Shown piece by piece: positions 50,907-60,396 of a DNA stretch of 64,000 nucleotides (positions within the stretch are counted from its first letter, which is position 1; every line of letters starts with the position of its first letter). The stretch lies in the IMG/VR virus record IMGVR_UViG_3300042511_000879, positions 62,001 through 126,000 of that record. The stretch is one strand, 5' to 3'. A model generated the notes under the pieces. The model saw nothing but the letters and a program-made list of their open reading frames with translations. It had not been told where the DNA came from and did not search any database. A program made the position numbers and the translations under genes.

Positions 50907-52880
50907 TTATTTAAAAGAAAGTTTCTCATCTCCTTTTTTATATGAAATCGTGTACGTTTTATTTCCTTTAACAATTTCTTTAGCTAAAATACCATCTGCT
51001 AATAAGTCTTCAACATACGTTTGAATTGCTCTTTTAAGAGGTCTAGCTCCATATTGAGCATCATACCCACGTTCTGCTAAAAATACTATCGCCGTTTTTG
51101 CAACTTTAATAATATATTCTTGTTCAACCATTCTTTCAATTACTTTTTGAATTTCGATTTCTGCAATTTTAGCAACATCTTCTTGTTTTAATCCATCAAA
51201 CAATACTATTTCATCCAATCTATTTAAGAATTCCGGAGCAAATTTGTTTTTAAGCTCTTTTCTGATAACAGTTTCCATTTCCATTTTGTGGGTGGCCGTA
51301 GAACTTGAACTTGAGAATCCGATTCCAGCCCCAAATTCTGCAACTCTTTTTGCTCCAACATTACTTGTCATAATAATGATAGTATTCGTAAAGTCAATAG
51401 TTCTACCAAGAGTATCTGTTAAACGACCCTCATCTAAAACCTGTAACAAGATATTGAAAATATCTGGGTGGGCCTTTTCAACTTCATCAAATAATACTAC
51501 TGAATATGGTTTACGTCGGACTTGTTCTGTTAACTGTCCACCATCCTCATGTCCTTCATATCCCGGAGGAGAACCAATAAGTCTACTTACGTTAAACTTT
51601 TCTTGGTATTCTGACATGTCGATTCTGATTAAAGAATCCTCGCTTCCGAAATAATATTCAGAAAGGGCTTTAACAGTTTCAGTTTTACCAACTCCAGTAG
51701 GTCCAATAAACATAAATGAACCGATAGGTTTTTTAGATGAACTTACTCCAGTTCGGCTTCTTTTAATAACTCTACATAGACCTTCAACCGCAGTATCTTG
51801 CCCGATAATCATCGCTTTTAATTCATTTTCCATATCAATAACAATTCTGCTCTCGTCATCGGTCATTCTTGTTACCGGAATTCCAGTAGATTCAGAAATT
51901 ACTTCAGCAATATCTTCATAAGTTACTGCCTTCTTATTTAGTCTAAGCGTCTCCTCCCATTCTTTGGTTCTTTTTGTTATCTCTTCTCGCTTACTAATTT
52001 CAAGGTCTCTTAAATTTCCGGCTTTTTCATAATTAGTAGCATCTGCTGCTTTTAACTTTGCGGCTTTTAATTTATCAGCTTCAATTTCAAGTTCTTTAAT
52101 AATTTCTGGAATTTTTACCTCTTTTAAATGTACTTTTGCTCCAGCCTCGTCCATAACATCAATTGCTTTGTCCGGTAATTCTCTTTGAGTAATATATCGG
52201 TCAGATAATACTACACAGGCTTTAATAGCGTCAGGAGTATATGATACTGAATGGAAGTCTTCGTAATTTGGTTTAATTCTGTCTAGAATTTCGATTGCAT
52301 CTTCAAGGGATGGTGGGTCTATAAAGATTTCTTGGAATCTTCTGGTAAGAGCTCCATCGGTTTCAATATTTTCACGATACTCATCGATTGTCGTAGCACC
52401 AATACATTGTACTTGTCCTCTTGCCAATGCCGGTTTTAAGATATTACTAGCATCTAATGAACCACTTACACCACCAGCGCCTACAATTGTGTGAATCTCA
52501 TCAATAAAGACAATAACATCTGGGTTCTCTTTAAGTTCATCAACAATGTTTTTCATTCGTTCCTCAAATTCTCCACGGTATTTTGTACCTGCAACTACGT
52601 TTGCAATATTAAGAGCAATTATACGTTTATTAAGAAGAGTCATTGCAACTTTCTTTTCAACAATACGTTGCGCAATTGCTTCAACTAGTGCAGTTTTACC
52701 AACCCCAGGATCCCCTAAAATAATTGGATTGTTTTTCTTTCTACGAGAAAGGATTTGACATATTCTATGGACCTCTTTTTCTCTTCCGATGATAGGGTCA
52801 AGTTTCCCATCTGCCGCTAGTTTAGTTAAGTCCTCTCCGAATTGGTCAATGAATGGAGTATTTGTTTTCTTACTGGTCAT
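50907..52880 (-). CDS. clpC: ClpC-type Hsp100 ATPase lacking the Clp N-terminal repeat domain
   Basis: Two AAA+ modules (GDPGVGKT and GPTGVGKT), UVR middle domain (NYEKAGNLRD), IGF loop (GAGIGFS); sequence begins directly at the D1 pre-helix. Confidence 0.92.
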   Translation of the reverse strand: MTSKKTNTPFIDQFGEDLTKLAADGKLDPIIGREKEVHRICQILSRRKKNNPIILGDPGVGKTALVEAIAQRIVEKKVAMTLLNKRIIALNIANVVAGTKYRGEFEERMKNIVDELKENPDVIVFIDEIHTIVGAGGVSGSLDASNILKPALARGQVQCIGATTIDEYRENIETDGALTRRFQEIFIDPPSLEDAIEILDRIKPNYEDFHSVSYTPDAIKACVVLSDRYITQRELPDKAIDVMDEAGAKVHLKEVKIPEIIKELEIEADKLKAAKLKAADATNYEKAGNLRDLEISKREEITKRTKEWEETLRLNKKAVTYEDIAEVISESTGIPVTRMTDDESRIVIDMENELKAMIIGQDTAVEGLCRVIKRSRTGVSSSKKPIGSFMFIGPTGVGKTETVKALSEYYFGSEDSLIRIDMSEYQEKFNVSRLIGSPPGYEGHEDGGQLTEQVRRKPYSVVLFDEVEKAHPDIFNILLQVLDEGRLTDTLGRTIDFTNTIIIMTSNVGAKRVAEFGAGIGFSSSSSTATHKMEMETVIRKELKNKFAPEFLNRLDEIVLFDGLKQEDVAKIAEIEIQKVIERMVEQEYIIKVAKTAIVFLAERGYDAQYGARPLKRAIQTYVEDLLADGILAKEIVKGNKTYTISYKKGDEKLSFK

Positions 52881-52931
52881 ATTGTGTATATTAATTTATT
52901 ATGGTAGTATTATAATATGTGCGGATCCCTG

Positions 52932-53144
52932 TTATGAATGGGTACCTTTTAAATTGTTAACCGAACGTTGAACACATTCAGGACATAGAGATGCAGTGGC
53001 TTCGGCTCCTACAACAGTCCAGTTCTCGCATGGTCCATCTTCAGGCCCATATTCTGCCCATTTACTCTTTTCCGGTTCTGAATTCTGACAAATCATCGAT
53101 ACGACCTTACGGCCTTTAACTTCAGTTTCTTTAGTTTTCCACAT
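52932..53144 (-). CDS. Small putative zinc-binding protein
   Basis: C...C...CPEC pattern; class-2 promoter at 53162-53188. Confidence 0.6.
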   Translation of the reverse strand: MWKTKETEVKGRKVVSMICQNSEPEKSKWAEYGPEDGPCENWTVVGAEATASLCPECVQRSVNNLKGTHS

Positions 53145-53189
53145 AGTATATTTATTTTAGATTTATATTGAGTTATTCCAATTTGTTTC

Positions 53190-54590
53190 AGGGTAAACTT
53201 AAAGAACCTTTGAGTTAAGTGAAAAATTTTTATTCTGTAATTCAGACCGGGTGCACCCTCCTATTGCGTGGGAAAATTTGGGTTTCAATCATCAAAAAAA
53301 TGAAATAATCTACCAGAACGATTGAACCGTTGAGGCCGTTTGAAATACATAAAGTCACATTGAGGGACTATTGGGCGGCCCTCCCCTAGCCCTATTAATA
53401 CCTATTGGCACATCGGTCGTCACAGTATACTGAGCACTCTATTGGAGGTATCAGAATGGGTGTGTCCTTCCTGTAGATACTCTATATAATAACGGATGTA
53501 CACTATAGGGGTTTTTAAATATCGTATACTATTAGATAGAATAGTTCTCTTTTTAATTAGAATCCCTACAGCACGCCCCCACCCCGCCCCTTTGGGACTC
53601 TATGGGATAGAGGTCAATTTTATTTTTTTCTATAGGATTTTTTTGAGAGCTTAGAGACTTGGAGTACCTCAGAGAGGTGAGAGAGCGGTGAGTCACCCTA
53701 CCTTTCACCTTTGAGACTTGGATACTTCTTATATCCTCATAGGACCTATTAGTTTCAACGGGTTACTCTTTATTTCACAGTACACTTCGTGCCTGACACA
53801 GTACCCTCAGGTCAATCTGAGCCAACCATCGGTAATTGGTAACGGTCTTATTGGTTAATTATAGGTTCTTTATGTTTCTAGTAACGGTGATATCCATTCT
53901 ATCGGTCTCAATTGGTCTTTGGTCACCTTCCGGACCTGGGTAATTTTTTGGGTAGGGCAACATTGAAGTACTCTGAGGGTGGGATGGACCATTGGCTACC
54001 ATCGGAGGACCATCAGAGGACCATTGACGCTGGGAGGGTCTCTCAACATTGAGGTATTGATATTCCCGGACGGGGATAATTCGTCCACTTCTATGAAACA
54101 CATTTATCAAAGGTCTATATTAGTTAGGAAGTCTAGAGCTTTGATCCTACAGTCCTTTGAGAACCTCTAGACCTGGCTTTTATAAGGATCCACCCTGGGT
54201 GCTGACCGCTCCGTAGACCTGCCCAACCGGTATTGAGGGTCAATGCACACGTGCCCTAGAGTCCAGTGGTGACTGGAAGAGTCCTGCTCTACCCTAGTTA
54301 CCCTGTGTCTGTAGTGAACTATTAGTATTATTGTCATTCTTGTGCAGAGCACACCTGCATTGTGCAGGCATTGACCTGCATTGCCTATTGCAACAGTTGA
54401 TCAGTGCACTACAGGTAGATAGGTCTATTGCCCTTACAACAATATTGAGCCTATTGAGCATATTGAACCTTTGAGGACATTGAGTAATCATTGAATTGCA
54501 TTGATTATTGCTACAGGGCATTGAGCCGGGCATTGCTACAGGACATTGATCCTGGACATTGCGCCGGGCATTGATCTGGGGACATTGATC
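53190..54590. other. Non-coding, GC-richer, repeat- and hairpin-rich island (left)
   Basis: About 1.4 kb without a credible gene in an otherwise fully packed genome; many (C/T)ATTG and GGACCAT motifs, hairpins and C runs. Confidence 0.7.
54350..54590 (+). repeat. Degenerate short-period (C/T)ATTG array
   Basis: About 19 ATTG copies between 54359 and 54587, mostly spaced 9-14 nt; the later copies read GG(A/G)CATTG. Confidence 0.85.
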
Positions 54591-54593
54591 CTC

Positions 54594-55298
54594 CTATTTG
54601 AATCTGGGAGTATTGATCCTGGGAGAGTTGAAACGGAGATTAGGCGCGGAGATACTCTTCTGTTTATAAGCTGGGCCTAGGTCCCTTTCTGGTGCCTTAT
54701 AAGGGGACATTGTATTTGTCTTGTCAAAACTTGTTATAGGGAATGGGGCTGGTTCCGATACCTTATTATTAGATGGGTCATATTGTTTTTGGCTAGTACG
54801 TTTTATAGGTGCACTATCTGGTTGTTTATTAACATTTGCGTTAGGGTCTCCATTATCGTGCCCGAAGTCACTATCTATAGAACCTCTATCTCCACCTGTA
54901 TTGTTTGCTATCATATTACCCATTTGTGCATCTATAAGAGATTCTTTAAACCCCTTAGAACGAGGTTGAGGTGTTTGAGCTATATCGGTTTCCTTAGTTG
55001 GTGTTTGGGCCTGATCGCTTGACGATAGTGTTTGTTTATCGTATTGGACATTTTGATTGGCTGGATTATTTTGCTTTCGGGCAGTATCTGAGGTTGCCTT
55101 ATTACCCTGTTGGGTTTGAGCATTAACATCACTTCCAGCCTTATTTATACCCGTTGCATCTATAGGAGATATTGAACTGTCTCCTGGGGATGGATTTAAA
55201 CTACTAGGAACTGATGAGGTATCTGTCTTATTAGAGGTTTGAGTCTTAGCAGCATTTACCCTATCGCTTATACTAATTTGAGTTAGACCTATCTTCAT
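54594..55298 (-). CDS. Low-complexity, probably disordered S/T/Q/P/D-rich protein
   Basis: 705-nt open frame with few hydrophobic residues. Confidence 0.6.
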   Translation of the reverse strand: MKIGLTQISISDRVNAAKTQTSNKTDTSSVPSSLNPSPGDSSISPIDATGINKAGSDVNAQTQQGNKATSDTARKQNNPANQNVQYDKQTLSSSDQAQTPTKETDIAQTPQPRSKGFKESLIDAQMGNMIANNTGGDRGSIDSDFGHDNGDPNANVNKQPDSAPIKRTSQKQYDPSNNKVSEPAPFPITSFDKTNTMSPYKAPERDLGPAYKQKSISAPNLRFNSPRINTPRFK

Positions 55299-55887: not shown

Positions 55888-56032
55888 TTAATTAGATATG
55901 TAAATATAATCATTATTTGTGATTCCGGAAACTGTTTGCGCAAGTATTTTCAGAAAGTTATTAACAATTGTTGTTCATAAGTTTTTTGAGAAACTGTTTC
56001 GGGATTCATATAAATTGATTATATTTACATAT
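55888..56032. promoter_or_regulatory. Divergent pair of class-1 promoters
   Basis: Minus: TTTC(55931-55928)-N19-TATATTTA(55908-55901). Plus: TTTC(55997-56000)-N19-TATATTTA(56020-56027). Confidence 0.85.
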
Positions 56033-56039
56033 GAAAAAT

Positions 56040-56165
56040 AGCAAAATGACATAACGGGTTCGTATAGCACAAAGAATCGAGAGATTCGACACGGGCGGTC
56101 CTTTAAACCAGGGGAGGAAGAGTAGACTCCAGCTCGTCTTCTATTTAGAGGTCTGAAACGCCACT
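56040..56165 (+). ncRNA. Candidate small structured RNA
   Basis: Lies directly downstream of a class-1 promoter, has no usable ORF (ATG...TAA after 7 codons), is GC-richer, and contains a GAATC-GAGA-GATTC GNRA hairpin plus nested stems. Confidence 0.45.
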
Positions 56166-56167
56166 AG

Positions 56168-56245
56168 AAACTTTAACAAAAAATTAACATAAAATAGTTT
56201 CGGTTCTTGAAACTATTGATTATATTTACATATCTAATTAAAACA
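56168..56245 (+). promoter_or_regulatory. Class-1 promoter
   Basis: TTAACA repeats, TTTC(56198-56201)-N19-TATATTTA(56221-56228)CATATCTAATT. Confidence 0.85.
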
Positions 56246-58269: not shown

Positions 58270-58340
58270 TTTAACAAACTTTTAACATTTAAAAGTTTCC
58301 GGTTTCCACAATATTGATTATATTTACATATCTAATTAAA
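58270..58340 (+). promoter_or_regulatory. Class-1 promoter
   Basis: TTAACA repeats, TTTC(58296-58299)-N19-TATATTTA(58319-58326). Confidence 0.85.
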
Positions 58341-58350
58341 ACACCACATT

Positions 58351-59460
58351 ATGAACAGACAATCTTACTTAATCCGCACACAACCTAACGAATTCATCGT
58401 TTTAGTAAACACGAAAAACCCAATTGACACCCTCTTAATCGAGCCTGGTCATTCAAAATATACTTGGGTCCAAAACCAAGACGCTAACCGTATTATCAAC
58501 ATCACCGAAACTGGTAGATGGACAAGTAATAAGGACTATAATAACGATTACGGAACCTCAACATCTAAACAACCTCAATCGGTTAACCCTTGTGCCCCTG
58601 TTGAGGTTACACTTACCAAATTAGACGACTTAAATATCGATGATTCCCTATTTACCAGCCTTCCAACTGGAACTATCTTTGACCAGTTTTGTTCAACTGA
58701 AGGTGGATTCTTACCTGGAACTAATATAATGGCTGCTGGAGCTCCTGGTGTCGGTAAAACAACAGTGCTATTAGAACTTCTATCTAAGCTATCTGCTCAA
58801 GGTAAACGGGTCTTATTTATATCTGCCGAAATGAACCAGATAGATATGGCACGTTACCTTAAAAGATTCCCACACTGGGGACAATTACCTATCCTTTTCC
58901 TATCTGACTACACTGAGTCTTGTCCAAAAGGAGTAATTGAAGGTGTACTTAACCAAGGATGGGACGTTGTCTTAACCGATTCATATACCGAAGTTAACGA
59001 TACCATCAAGGAGGAATGTAACATGACCAGAGGTAAAACCGAAAAATGGTTCCTAGACCTAATGACTCAGCATAATAAAGGTGGTAACAAGACGAAAACA
59101 TATACAACCTTCGTAACTATCCTGCAATTATCTAAAGGTGGTAATTTCGTTGGTTCTAATAAACTGAAACACATGACAACTGCGATGATGATGTTGGACT
59201 GGGACGGAAACGAAAACTCAGGTAGAAGGTTCATGGAGTTCTCTAAAAACAGAACAGGTCAAGTCGGTAAAAAACTATATTTCGAATTATCAGATGGTGT
59301 TTCCTTCGACGAAGGCCGATATACAAGAGACCTATTTAACGACGAGGTCCTAGCTGAGGAAAGAAAAGCCCTAACAGGAGAAAGTAATGCCTTCGACAAA
59401 CTATTCGGTTTCGACAAGGATGCCGTACCTGAGGAATTAAAAACCCTGGTAGAACTATAA
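58351..59460 (+). CDS. RadA/Sms-like RecA-fold ATPase without Zn finger or Lon-like domain
   Basis: GGFLPG...GAPGVGKTT, VLFISAEM, LTDS, GSNKLKHMTTAMM and KNRTG (compare RadA KNRFG). Confidence 0.75.
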   Translation: MNRQSYLIRTQPNEFIVLVNTKNPIDTLLIEPGHSKYTWVQNQDANRIINITETGRWTSNKDYNNDYGTSTSKQPQSVNPCAPVEVTLTKLDDLNIDDSLFTSLPTGTIFDQFCSTEGGFLPGTNIMAAGAPGVGKTTVLLELLSKLSAQGKRVLFISAEMNQIDMARYLKRFPHWGQLPILFLSDYTESCPKGVIEGVLNQGWDVVLTDSYTEVNDTIKEECNMTRGKTEKWFLDLMTQHNKGGNKTKTYTTFVTILQLSKGGNFVGSNKLKHMTTAMMMLDWDGNENSGRRFMEFSKNRTGQVGKKLYFELSDGVSFDEGRYTRDLFNDEVLAEERKALTGESNAFDKLFGFDKDAVPEELKTLVEL

Positions 59461-60120
59461 CAAATATACGGCTGGCAGCCGAAACTGCCTTAATTAGATA
59501 GAGATTTCCGGGAGTGTGGTGTTCCCGGAATTCTTGTATTCCGAGGCTGGCAGTTTCAAAATACCCGCTGGGGCAAGGGACGATTACCAATGGCCGGGCA
59601 AGGCAGAATTGTTTCACCCGCTGCGGCACTAGGAACTGGTAGAAATCTGGTGCTGGGCATGGTTTCGGTTGGTTTTTGTGGTGCCCAGGAGTGTGGAGAG
59701 GGTCCGGAGTGTCTCGGAGGGTGACCCAACTCGACGAGAGGTTTAAGGCCCAATGAGGAACATTGAGGAACATGAAGGGGCCCTTAGAGGAACATTGAGG
59801 TGACATTGCGAGCTTGGAGTGCCTGCTATATATCATTTTAATAAAAAAGGTAGAACTGGGGTACCTGGTTGGCTGGAGATTGAAAGGGGTTAGGGAGGGT
59901 TGGTAGGACCATAAGGGGCTTAGAATCTGGACAGGTATGGGGGTCAGGAGGGGTAGAAGGGTTCTTTATAGGGGGTTTATATCCTTATACTGTTATTCTT
60001 ATATCTGTATATCTATATAGAGGTTTAGATGTCTTAGATGTTTTTGTTTTAGGTTTATTAGATTTATTTCTTTTTTATTGTGGGGGAGGGGTGGATTCCG
60101 GACGTGCCGGACCTAAATAA
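59461..60120. other. Non-coding, GC-richer, hairpin-rich island (right) with G runs and an AT-rich tract
   Basis: Multiple perfect stems in 59469-59730, GAGGAACATTGAGG repeats, G runs at 59886-59975 and 60082-60094, and a T-rich tract at 59976-60080. Confidence 0.7.
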
Positions 60121-60144
60121 AAAAGAGGACCTTTAGGGTCCTCT
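60118..60144 (-). terminator. Intrinsic terminator
   Basis: AGAGGACC/GGTCCTCT stem (60124-60144) followed by a T run on the minus strand, after 60151..60396. Confidence 0.8.
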
Positions 60145-60150
60145 GTGTGG

Positions 60151-60396
60151 TTATTTTTGTATGTCTATAATATCGTATTTGTGGAAACCCTTTTCTATGT
60201 TCCGGATGGCAGCATCGATATCAGTATACTTGCCTTTCCACTGGGTTTCAAAATTACCTTTTACTGTAATTCCTTTAAATCCGTCTGGCGATGCACCTTG
60301 GATTGTTGTAGTGTCAAATGGTTTATCATAGATAATTTCAATTTGGTATTTACTGGATTCATTTAAGAACGCTTCAAAGGGTTTGATATGTTTCAT
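60151..60396 (-). CDS. Small protein with capsid-targeting-like leader
   Basis: MKHIKPFEAFLNE|S. Confidence 0.65.
   Translation of the reverse strand: MKHIKPFEAFLNESSKYQIEIIYDKPFDTTTIQGASPDGFKGITVKGNFETQWKGKYTDIDAAIRNIEKGFHKYDIIDIQK

What the first reader, a model, noticed from the sequence alone, without database searches (positions are those of the whole stretch)
59461..59830. Dense multi-hairpin GC-rich element after the RadA-like gene
Seen: CGGCTG-G-CAGCCG palindrome (59469-59481). GAAACTGCC...GGCAGTTTC encloses TTCCGGGA/TCCCGGAA. CTGGGCA/TGCCCAG stem; GGGTC...GACCC enclosing a bulged TCCGGAG/CTCGGA stem. Direct repeats ACCCGCTG x2, GGGCAAGG x2 and GGAGTGT x3. No U-tailed terminator is evident. 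Inference: a ~300-350-nt structured ncRNA or 3' leader continuing the early transcript, or a folded ssDNA signal such as a single-strand origin or transfer stop. The duplicated GGCTGGCAG allows alternative folds, suggesting a switch.
Basis: partly seen in the sequence, partly recalled or inferred. Interest (0 to 1): 0.7.

Follow-up and report, generated by a model that had tools for sequence, protein, structure and literature searches.

The report
Phage terminator hairpin matching own leader
The "multi-hairpin RNA" is a conserved non-coding region of an uncultured lake jumbo phage in which only the first hairpin is a supported fold: it is the terminator of a RecA-like gene, and its loop and flank are antisense to that gene's own start region; the rest looks like protein-binding DNA, not folded RNA.

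Summary
The window is part of a 236-kb virus record of about 32% GC from lake water. Positions 59461-59830 are the left half of a 690-nt gene-free gap between convergent genes.

Only one hairpin (59506-59530) is better than chance.
- Its stem covaries in 14 relatives: 8 of 8 pairs show double changes, 91% of cells are paired, and 0 of 500 shuffles match.
- Its loop, TGTGGTG, is invariant.
- In several relatives a T-run follows, so it looks like the terminator of the RecA/RadA-like gene.

New result: the loop and an 8-14-nt stretch before the hairpin are reverse complements of two adjacent blocks in the gene's own leader, which has no Shine-Dalgarno sequence (-22 to -3). Both pairs co-vary among the lineages compared. 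This resembles the 5'-3' UTR pairing of icaR and hbs.

The remaining 281 nt fold no better than shuffles (z = -0.10), match no Rfam family, and have no conserved consensus fold. They hold single-copy boxes at fixed spacing, tandem ACATTGA repeats of variable copy number, and a conserved promoter box on the opposite strand. I read this part as protein-binding DNA, possibly an origin.

Public RNA data were uninformative. No single 300-350-nt structured RNA is supported.

The parts
58318..58350 (+). Early-type promoter core (TTATATTTACAT) and leader without a Shine-Dalgarno sequence of the RecA/RadA-like gene. Block A is TATCTAATTAA (58329-58339). Block B is AACACCACA (58340-58348). The ATG is at 58351.
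   Evidence: The same promoter core recurs about 45 times in the genome, a fixed distance before start codons. Leader sequences of the relatives.
58351..59460 (+). Gene for a RecA-superfamily ATPase of 369 aa (RadA/Sms-, DnaB-C- and KaiC-like).
   Evidence: Pfam KaiC-type ATPase 4.6e-9. PHROG DnaB-like helicase. PDB RecA and RadA. 1227 homologues, mostly from metagenomes.
59469..59481 (+). Palindrome CGGCTG-G-CAGCCG. It is not conserved as a hairpin.
   Evidence: Present in the window and in L028. It reads CGGCTGGCACCCG in L005, L006, L007 and L024, and is absent in L009 and L026.
59490..59500 (+). E1: the single-stranded flank TTAATTAGATA, the reverse complement of leader block A.
   Evidence: Exact 11-nt match. 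The matching pair changes together in other lineages.
59506..59540 (+). Hairpin 1, terminator type. Arms 59506-59513 and 59523-59530; loop GTGTGGTGT at 59514-59522; U-rich tail 59531-59540. The loop segment TGTGGTGTT (59515-59523) is the reverse complement of leader block B.
   Evidence: Covariation. Flagged as terminator-like. Single copy in the genome. Loop-leader match.
59541..59699 (.). Variable G-rich segment built from repeated modules (CCAATGGCCGG...GAATTGTTT...CAGGGGCA). It includes the CTGGGCA/TGCCCAG stem.
   Evidence: There are 1 to 2 module copies, and insertions of more than 100 nt in relatives. The stems are not kept consistently.
59700..59766 (.). Single-copy conserved core: GG-N-GGGTG (59716-59723), then 17 nt, then GTTTAA (59741-59746), then 11 nt, then GAACATTGA (59758-59766).
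   Evidence: The spacing is fixed in nine distinct variants of four lineages while the spacer sequences diverge. Unique in the genome. No consensus fold. Local hairpin energies are not significant.
59757..59809 (.). Four tandem units of the ACATTGA type: GGAACATTGA, GGAACATGAA, GGAACATTGA, GTGACATTGC.
   Evidence: Copy number and unit sequence differ between relatives, up to about 20 units in L013.
59827..59834 (-). GATATATA box, the phage's second promoter class, pointing leftwards into the region.
   Evidence: The genome has 36 copies on the gene strand against 1 on the other. Most lie 21-35 nt before start codons. The box is invariant in the close relatives and in L011-13. No conserved ORF follows it.
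59835..60150 (.). The rest of the same intergenic locus: G-runs (59880-59975), an AT-rich stretch with TTAGAT repeats (59980-60070), a G-run (60080-60095), and the intrinsic terminator of the - strand genes (60144-60115).
   Evidence: The order of elements is kept in relatives with only 65-76% protein identity.

Best explanation
The finding covers two different things.

(1) 59461 to about 59540 is the 3' untranslated end of the mRNA of the RecA/RadA-like gene.
- It ends in an intrinsic-terminator-type hairpin.
- The hairpin's invariant loop (UGUGGUGUU) and the single-stranded stretch just before the hairpin (UUAAUUAGAUA) are antisense to two adjacent blocks of the same gene's leader (-22 to -3). 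That is where the ribosome must bind, because the leader has no Shine-Dalgarno sequence.
- I infer that the 3' end pairs with the 5' end and damps translation of this gene or changes its mRNA stability. The pairing could act within one mRNA molecule, or through a stable terminator fragment acting on other copies.

(2) About 59541-59830, together with the sequence up to 60110, is not a folded RNA.
- It is a lineage-wide cis-acting DNA locus.
- It holds single-copy boxes at fixed spacing, tandem ACATTGA-type repeats of variable number, and G-runs.
- Just outside the finding it has an AT-rich stretch with TTAGAT repeats.
- A conserved promoter box on the other strand fires into it.
- I infer a platform for DNA-binding proteins, most likely a replication origin or a comparable control site.

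Shown: the hairpin, its covariation, the complementarity and its co-variation, the repeats, the fixed spacing, and the genome-wide statistics of the promoter box.

Inferred: termination at the hairpin, actual 5'-3' pairing and its effect, protein binding, and origin function.
For: Hairpin:
- 14 distinct sequences give 8 of 8 pairs with changes on both sides and 91% of cells paired. The covariation score is 1.11 against 0.28 in shuffles (0 of 500 reach it), and the score collapses when the partner columns are slid.
- The internal wobble pairs are U-G on the + strand only (L009, L042; L014 and L047 by my reading of the sequences). This favours a + strand transcript.
- T5-T7 runs follow the hairpin in L005, L014, L041, L043 and L045. 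The scan flags it as terminator-like.
- It is single-copy in the genome.

Complementarity:
- In the window, 11 + 9 nt match exactly. Two-block matches are found in 14 of 16 relatives examined (L044 has only the loop block plus a 6-nt flank match; L047 only the loop block).
- The matches reach 13-22 nt. In 13 genomes they are reached by 0-17 of 500-1000 shuffled leaders.
- Both blocks change together between lineages. Block A examples: TATCTAATTAA, CAAATTAA, TAACTAATAA, TAATTAATCAA, ATAATTAAAACAAA, ATAACAAACA, ATATAACAAAT. Block B: CACCACA pairs with loop TGTGGTG in most; CATCCAC pairs with loop GTGGATG in L014, L046 and L047.
- The gene's own leader is the best duplex partner of the loop among 305 start regions.
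- This gene ranks first of 305 for leader-to-own-tail complementarity: 20 nt against a mean of 10.5, sd 3.3.
- Distant homologues without the non-coding gap score at chance.

Downstream part:
- z = -0.10, no Rfam match, and no consensus fold.
- Fixed 17- and 11-nt spacings between invariant boxes.
- Tandem units with a period near 10 nt and very variable copy number.
- The same ATTGA motif is clustered about 22 times at 54370-54620.
- Promoter-box statistics.
- The gap of 690-1000 nt and the order of its elements are kept down to 65% protein identity.
- A ParB_N-like small protein is encoded two genes away.
Against: - There is no usable transcript evidence. The RNA-library contigs are sparse, have no direction, and cover genes and non-coding DNA alike. 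Neither the 3' end at about 59540 nor the activity of the - strand promoter is shown.
- The U-tract in the window itself is poor (TTCTTGTATT).
- The two complementary blocks lie in the same 5'-to-3' order in the leader and in the tail. They therefore cannot form one continuous duplex. Forming both at once needs a fold-back geometry that I did not model.
- The leaders of this promoter family are A/C-rich and similar to one another. Block A therefore also matches other early leaders (16-18 nt).
- Duplex energies exceed those of shuffled leaders only modestly (z from -0.2 to -2.6).
- For the origin reading: GC skew falls monotonically along the genome with no switch here, no initiator gene was identified, and the site lies between convergent rather than divergent genes.
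- A few short helices may still exist. One encloses GGNGGGTGA, with compensatory differences between the window and L024. Another is GGCCC/GGGCY around the repeats. An RNA role for the downstream part is therefore not excluded.
Confidence: 0.45

Rival explanations
1. One reading: one long (300-350 nt) structured + strand RNA, either a 3' leader or an ncRNA, possibly a switch, made by read-through from the RecA-like gene.
For: The + strand is G-rich and its wobble pairs favour that strand. The RNAalifold energy on the close group is lower on + (-81) than on - (-63). The hairpin in the window has a weak U-tract, so read-through is conceivable. The window and L024 differ by paired changes around the GGAGGGTGA box.
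Against: z = -0.10 for 59546-59826. No Rfam match. No consensus structure across clades. Core hairpin energies are not significant. Tandem arrays vary from 2 to about 20 units. L011-13 carry a second, canonical terminator right after hairpin 1. Relatives with T6-T7 tails should terminate efficiently.
Confidence: 0.1
2. A non-coding - strand RNA starts at the conserved GATATATA box (59834-59827) and runs leftwards. It would be C-rich, carry repeated UCAAUG units, and end with the hairpin whose loop (AACACCACA) and flank (UAUCUAAUUAA) copy the RecA-like leader. It could act as an antisense RNA against the early + strand genes, or as a decoy for a factor that binds that leader.
For: The box is a genuine promoter-type motif on that strand (36 copies against 1, at the correct distance from start codons). 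It is conserved at this spot. No ORF follows it. Both ATTGA clusters lie where - strand transcription would cover them. The first 85 nt fold well on the - strand too (z = -4.0).
Against: The internal wobble pairs of the hairpin become C-A mismatches on the - strand. No - strand terminator is conserved. The whole - strand fold gives z = -1.3. The box was not found at this spot in L042, L043 or L045, which keep the rest of the locus. One RNA-library contig spans the box (59667-59901), which a start at about 59820 would not give.
Confidence: 0.2
3. The whole gap, hairpin included, is the phage's origin of replication. The hairpin would act as a DNA (single-strand) signal for a primase or helicase, as in IncQ oriV or the pRN1 origin.
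For: The gap has iteron-like repeats, G-rich and AT-rich blocks with TTAGAT repeats, single-copy status, and a position directly after a RecA/DnaB-like ATPase gene. A stem-loop origin downstream of the replication gene is documented for pRN1 (PMC4234260, listed; abstract only).
Against: A DNA signal does not explain the covarying complementarity of the loop and flank to the gene's own leader. T-runs after the hairpin point to transcription termination. There is no skew switch and no identified initiator.
Confidence: 0.15
4. A decayed gene, or a scar of cassette shuffling or inversion, without a present function.
For: The + strand three-gene island is inverted relative to nearly all other genes. 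E1 copies part of the common early leader in inverted orientation. Short ORFs with a shared start (MAGQGRIV...) occur in some relatives.
Against: Blocks of 50 nt are identical among phages whose neighbouring protein is only 90% identical. The architecture is kept down to 65% protein identity. The hairpin shows compensatory evolution. Reading frames are not kept.
Confidence: 0.04

Closest known systems
Pairing between the 5' and 3' UTRs of a bacterial mRNA: icaR of Staphylococcus aureus (PMC3868564) and hbs of Bacillus subtilis (PMC5737220)
   Same: A sequence in the 3' UTR is complementary to the ribosome-binding region of the same mRNA. In those cases the expected outcome is control of translation and mRNA decay.
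   Different: Here the target leader has no Shine-Dalgarno sequence. The antisense parts lie in the loop and the 5' flank of the terminator hairpin itself, as two blocks. The gene belongs to a phage. No experiment exists for this case.
The fbi/tac fold-back of hok mRNA (hok/sok of plasmid R1). This comparison rests on my own knowledge.
   Same: The 3' end of the mRNA pairs with its 5' end and keeps the mRNA translationally inert.
   Different: The gene is not a toxin, there is no Sok-like antisense gene, and no evidence of 3' processing.
Intrinsic (Rho-independent) terminators
   Same: A G+C-rich stem of 6-11 bp lies 45-60 nt after the stop codon, followed by a T-run in many relatives.
   Different: The loop sequence is invariant over wide divergence, which ordinary terminators do not show. 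The U-tract is weak in the window's own clade.
Iteron-type origins such as IncQ (RSF1010) oriV (own knowledge) and the stem-loop origin downstream of the replication gene of pRN1 (PMC4234260)
   Same: Tandem direct repeats, G/C-rich and A/T-rich blocks, hairpins, and a position next to a helicase-type ATPase gene.
   Different: No initiator protein was identified, there is no replication evidence, the genome is a 236-kb phage, and the repeats differ in sequence and number between lineages.
Promoter-early stem-loop (PeSL) cassettes of T4-type phages (own knowledge)
   Same: The genome is built from about 45 repeated cassettes of terminator hairpin, early promoter and leader. The element studied here sits at the end of one such cassette.
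   Different: The loop of this hairpin differs from the loop shared by the cassettes (ATTTTACCG). It matches its own gene's leader instead.

Membership tests
Any Rfam family | A score at or above the family's gathering threshold | tested here: not met
   No match over the whole window at gathering scores. In 59300-60300 only four chance-level matches with E between 0.87 and 8.4, all far below their gathering scores. No tRNA or tmRNA.
Structured non-coding RNA (general) | Folding energy clearly below that of dinucleotide shuffles | tested here: not met
   z = -1.69 for the whole stretch on the + strand and -0.10 for 59546-59826. Only the first 85 nt are significant.
Structured non-coding RNA (general) | Conserved secondary structure supported by compensatory changes | tested here: inconclusive
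   Met for hairpin 1. Not met for the core. Other stems are broken or deleted in relatives. A few paired differences between the window and L024 remain.
Intrinsic terminator | A G+C-rich stem-loop shortly after a stop codon on the coding strand | tested here: met
   59506-59530, 46 nt after the stop codon. Present in all 16 relatives examined.
Intrinsic terminator | A U-tract directly after the stem | tested here: inconclusive
   T5-T7 in L005, L014, L041, L043 and L045. Only TTCTTGTATT or ATTTCGTGCGTT in the window's clade.
Intrinsic terminator | Transcripts end there | not testable with these tools
   Only undirected contigs of RNA libraries are available. One X26 contig ends at about 59540, but coverage is patchy everywhere.
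5'-3' UTR pairing (icaR/hbs type) | A 3' UTR segment complementary to the translation initiation region of the same gene | tested here: met
   11 + 9 nt exact in the window. Best of 305 genes. 13-22 nt in relatives, and rare among shuffled leaders.
5'-3' UTR pairing (icaR/hbs type) | The complementarity is maintained by co-variation | tested here: met
   Block A has at least nine different sequence pairs. Block B has two (CACCACA with TGTGGTG; CATCCAC with GTGGATG). In the cross-matching matrix, cognate pairs are highest or tied in 5 of 7 rows.
5'-3' UTR pairing (icaR/hbs type) | Pairing occurs and changes translation or mRNA stability | not testable with these tools
   This needs reporter assays with compensatory mutations, or RNA-RNA interaction mapping.
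Iteron-containing replication origin | Three or more direct repeats with a spacing close to the helical repeat | tested here: met
   Four units of period 10-11 at 59757-59809. 2 to about 20 units in relatives.
Iteron-containing replication origin | An adjacent A+T-rich unwinding region | tested here: inconclusive
   59980-60070 is AT-rich with TTAGAT repeats and is conserved. It lies 170 nt from the repeats, and the genome itself is 68% A+T.
Iteron-containing replication origin | A cognate initiator gene and/or a strand-composition switch at the site | tested here: not met
   Cumulative GC skew is monotonic. The neighbours are a DUF932-like protein, unknowns, a RecA-like ATPase and a ParB_N-like protein; none is a recognised initiator.
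   The record is a 236-kb phage genome. Nothing points to a rolling-circle ssDNA stage, and no test was possible.

The most novel reading that the evidence does not exclude
A family of freshwater jumbo phages regulates its RecA/RadA-like gene through a 'self-addressed' terminator. The loop and the 5' flank of the terminator hairpin pair with the gene's own Shine-Dalgarno-less start region, giving feedback within one mRNA or on other copies. The hairpin directly abuts the phage's replication origin, so that expression of the recombination/helicase-type ATPase is coupled to origin activity.
Probability: 0.3. Interest if true: 0.7.

Novelty: new variant of a known kind. Interest (0 to 1): 0.55.

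Why it matters
Long-range 5'-3' UTR pairing is documented for only a handful of bacterial mRNAs. To my knowledge it has not been described for a terminator loop in a large DNA phage, nor for mRNAs that lack a Shine-Dalgarno sequence.

Here the complementarity is supported by co-variation in more than a dozen uncultured phage genomes. It could be tested directly with a small reporter construct.

The adjacent conserved non-coding locus of 700-1000 nt is a candidate origin or control region for a widespread, uncultured group of lake phages. The homologous protein has 1227 database relatives. No cis-acting elements are known for this group.

The study also gives two promoter classes and a cassette architecture that would help annotate these genomes.

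Tried and rejected
- Rfam at gathering and at permissive thresholds, and tRNA/tmRNA search: nothing.
- blastn against isolated phages: no DNA match. By protein, the nearest record is an unannotated 484-kb uncultured phage at 37% identity. It lacks the element.
- RNA evidence: two run searches and two read-laying runs.
  - X24 holds one 241-nt contig over 59667-59901 but also a piece at 52745-52943.
  - X26 is patchy over genes and spacers.
  - All are undirected contigs, and DNA carry-over is not excluded.
  - They therefore give no conclusion on expression, strand or ends.
- Coding potential: no conserved ORF or frame on either strand. The 166-aa - strand ORF and the 44-aa + strand ORF are not kept.
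- GC skew as an origin indicator: monotonic, driven by the nearly uniform gene orientation.
- Sigma-54 or sigma-70 reading of TGGCAC...CTGC and of GGGTGA-N17-GTTTAA: spacings or hexamers do not fit, and both are single-copy (my own inspection).
- A long-range helix between CTGGCACC at the 5' end and GGTGCC(C)AG: present in some relatives, not in L007, and without compensatory change.
- A core hairpin around GGNGGGTGA: its register differs between clades and its energies are not significant.
- A second repeat array in the L011 clade: not found.
- Genome-terminus or packaging site: in the complete, terminally repeated relative (the record holding L014) the locus lies at 171-180 kb of 256 kb.
- Function of the genes behind the GATATATA boxes: PHROG gave nothing, so 'late' is an analogy only.
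Full report
CONTEXT

The window is positions 62001-126000 of a 236,071-bp IMG/VR virus record. The record has about 32% GC. DNA runs that hold the stretch are almost all lake-water metagenomes. Nearly all genes lie on the - strand, and GC skew falls monotonically along the genome.

The finding (59461-59830) is the left half of a 690-nt gene-free gap (59461-60150). On its left is a three-gene + strand island:
- a 378-aa DUF932-like protein;
- a 157-aa protein of unknown function;
- a 369-aa RecA-superfamily ATPase at 58351-59460.

On its right are converging - strand genes. 'RadA-like' is a fair label for the ATPase. It matches the Pfam KaiC-type ATPase family, PHROG DnaB-like helicase, and PDB RecA and RadA.

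THE OBSERVATION

The stretch is non-coding. Its ORFs are short, compositional, and not kept in frame among relatives.

The apparent density of hairpins is what G-rich sequence gives by chance.
- The whole stretch folds with z = -1.69 on the + strand and -1.27 on the - strand.
- After removing the first 85 nt, 59546-59826 folds with z = -0.10, and 89 of 200 shuffles fold at least as well.
- Only 59461-59545 is significant.
- Rfam finds nothing at gathering scores and only four chance-level matches at E up to 10. There is no tRNA or tmRNA.

RELATIVES

The ATPase gene brought in 14 viral loci. A DNA pattern taken from the conserved core added three new metagenome variants. A protein search followed by contig look-ups added seven more distant loci with 65-76% protein identity.

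All of them keep the gene order DUF932-like / small protein / RecA-like, then a 690-1000-nt non-coding gap, then convergent genes. Homologues at 37-47% identity lack the gap.

HAIRPIN 1

The stem-loop at 59506-59530 is the only element with strong structural support.
- On 14 distinct sequences, all 8 pairs show changes on both sides.
- 91% of cells are paired.
- The covariation score is 1.11 against 0.28 in shuffles, and 0 of 500 shuffles reach it.
- The signal vanishes when the partner columns are slid (for the first set).
- About fifteen different stem sequences carry the same loop core, TGTGGTG.
- Internal wobble pairs are U-G on the + strand, which would be C-A mismatches on the other strand (sequences). 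The folded strand is therefore the + strand, the sense strand of the ATPase gene.
- The hairpin begins 46 nt after the stop codon in the window; the distance varies among relatives.
- A T5-T7 run follows in L005, L014, L041, L043 and L045. The L011-13 clade adds a second, canonical terminator.
- The consensus scan flags the hairpin as terminator-like.
- It occurs once in the genome.

I conclude that it is the 3' stem-loop, and most probably the terminator, of the ATPase mRNA.

COMPLEMENTARITY TO THE GENE'S OWN LEADER

The ATPase gene has its own copy of a promoter-leader cassette, TTATATTTACAT-ATCTAATTAAAAC. The cassette recurs about 45 times in the genome. The leaders have no Shine-Dalgarno sequence.

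In the window:
- leader block A (TATCTAATTAA, -22 to -12) is the exact reverse complement of 59490-59500, just 5' of the hairpin;
- leader block B (AACACCACA, -11 to -3) is the exact reverse complement of the loop segment at 59515-59523.

This is specific to the gene.
- Among 305 start regions, the gene's own is the best partner of the loop.
- Among 305 genes, this one ranks first for complementarity between its leader and its own tail: 20 nt against a mean of 10.5, sd 3.3.

The same two-block arrangement is present in 14 of 16 relatives. L044 has only the loop block plus a 6-nt flank match, and L047 only the loop block.

Both blocks co-vary between lineages.
- Block A and its partner read CAAATTAA/TTAATTTG in L026, TAACTAATAA in L010, TAATTAATCAA in L011-13, ATAATTAAAACAAA in L042, ATAACAAACA in L043 and ATATAACAAAT in L045.
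- In L014, L046 and L047 the leader reads CATCCAC, and the hairpin loop reads GTGGATG in place of TGTGGTG.

In 13 of the 14 relatives tested with shuffles, 0 to 17 of 500-1000 shuffled leaders reach the observed sum of the two matches. L047, which has only the loop block, does not differ from shuffles. Distant homologues score at chance.

Because a covarying stem presents the loop, the simplest reading is RNA-RNA pairing between the 3' end and the translation start region of the same mRNA species. This works like icaR (PMC3868564) and hbs (PMC5737220).

Caveats:
- The two blocks stand in the same order in the leader and in the tail, so they cannot form one continuous helix.
- Block A is shared with other early leaders.
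- Duplex energies are only modestly better than those of shuffled leaders.
- No experiment exists.

THE REMAINDER OF THE FINDING

From about 59541 onward the sequence is conserved in blocks, but not as a fold.
- RNAalifold finds no consensus structure for the core across clades.
- Local hairpin energies around the core are not significant.
- The palindrome at 59469-59481, the outer GAAACTGCC/GGCAGTTTC helix, the CTGGGCA/TGCCCAG stem and the GGGTC/GACCC stem are each broken, deleted or invariant in relatives.

What is conserved instead:
- A single-copy core: GG-N-GGGTG, 17 nt, GTTTAA, 11 nt, then GAACATT or a close variant. The spacing is fixed while the spacers diverge.
- Tandem units of the ACATTGA type with a period near 10 nt. 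Their sequence and number change between lineages: 4 units here, 3 longer units in L005, about 20 in L013, and 2 in L042, L043 and L045.
- Further right, G-runs, an AT-rich stretch with TTAGAT repeats, a G-run, and the terminator of the - strand genes.

The motif ATTGA is also clustered about 22 times at 54370-54620, in a second non-coding region 5 kb away. Fixed spacing, helical periodicity and copy-number variation fit protein-binding DNA better than folded RNA. The layout resembles iteron-type origins. However, there is no skew switch and no recognised initiator. A ParB_N-like 135-aa protein is encoded nearby.

A PROMOTER ON THE OTHER STRAND

TATATATC at 59827-59834 reads GATATATA on the - strand. 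Genome-wide this octamer occurs 36 times on the gene strand and once on the other. Most copies lie in intergenic DNA 21-35 nt before start codons, and several follow a terminator directly.

The copy at 59827 is conserved in the close relatives and in L011-13. No conserved ORF follows it. It would drive a C-rich transcript leftwards through the repeats and the core. Whether it does so, and how far the transcript runs, is unknown. This is the main rival reading.

RNA DATA

Three RNA-labelled runs hold parts of the region, but only as undirected contigs.
- X24 has one contig over 59667-59901 and another at 52745-52943.
- X26 covers genes and spacers in patches. One of its contigs ends at about 59540.
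- X25 is probably DNA.

Nothing can be concluded about expression, strand or transcript ends.

VERDICT

The most likely picture is composite:
- a terminator hairpin that is antisense to its own gene's start region;
- followed by a conserved cis-acting DNA locus, origin-like or regulatory;
- with a promoter on the opposite strand firing into it.

The first part is a new variant of a known mechanism and is directly testable. The second part remains an inference.

Noticed in passing
window 52881-54593, especially 54370-54620: A second ORF-poor, G-rich non-coding region. It has an array of about 22 ATTG(A/C) units (for example GGACATTGATCC) at 9-13-nt spacing. It shares many short motifs with 59461-60150 and is 72-83% identical in close relatives.
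   Followed up: partly
whole genome; in the window at 56019, 56220, 57758, 58318 (+) and 55909, 43669, 39812, 39561, 23529 (-): About 45 copies of a cassette with these parts in order: two TTTAACA repeats; a terminator hairpin with conserved loop ATTTTACCG and covarying stems; a T-run; TTATATTTACAT; the leader (C)TAATTAAAACAAA; ATG. It recalls the promoter-early stem-loop cassettes of T4-type phages.
   Followed up: partly
whole genome; 36 sites, for example window 8807, 33518, 59827, 63328: A GATATATA box occurs on the gene strand 36 times against once on the other. It usually lies 21-35 nt before a start codon and often right after a terminator. It is probably a second (T4-late-like) promoter class. 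The function of the downstream genes could not be named.
   Followed up: partly
window 56035-56200: A GC-richer stretch lies between two direct copies of the early promoter and before the first + strand ORF. It may be a small RNA or a long leader. One RNA-library contig (X26) covers 56062-56131.
   Followed up: no
window 59983-59841, - strand: GGATATAAAC, a one-mismatch variant of the GATATATA box, is followed by about 125 nt of C-rich sequence and a weak terminator (AGGTACCCCAGTTCTACCTTTTTTATT). All of it is conserved in close relatives. It may be a small C-rich RNA.
   Followed up: no
genome 164-204 kb (outside the window): 29 tRNA genes lie in clusters. One is predicted with an 8-nt anticodon loop (anticodon 'ttga').
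   Followed up: no
all gene starts examined: The leaders are A/T- or A/C-rich and lack Shine-Dalgarno sequences. This suggests a host, such as Bacteroidota, that does not rely on them. Host assignment was not attempted.
   Followed up: no
window 54594-55298, - strand: The 234-aa ORF next to the ATTGA array encodes a low-complexity Ser/Thr/Asn/Gln/Pro-rich product with no family match. Its stored model has very low confidence (pLDDT 0.47). It may be a disordered protein or a doubtful gene.
   Followed up: partly
L025 (ERZ1034363 contig, 1528 nt): A low-coverage contig joins GC-rich bacterial-looking sequence directly to the phage core at GGGTGACCC. It is most likely an assembly chimera.
   Followed up: no
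L003 and L008 (the same 234-kb IMG/VR contig): The RecA-like gene appears at both ends of the contig, at 100% and 97% identity. This points to a circularly permuted or strain-mixed assembly, not to a true genome end.
   Followed up: no
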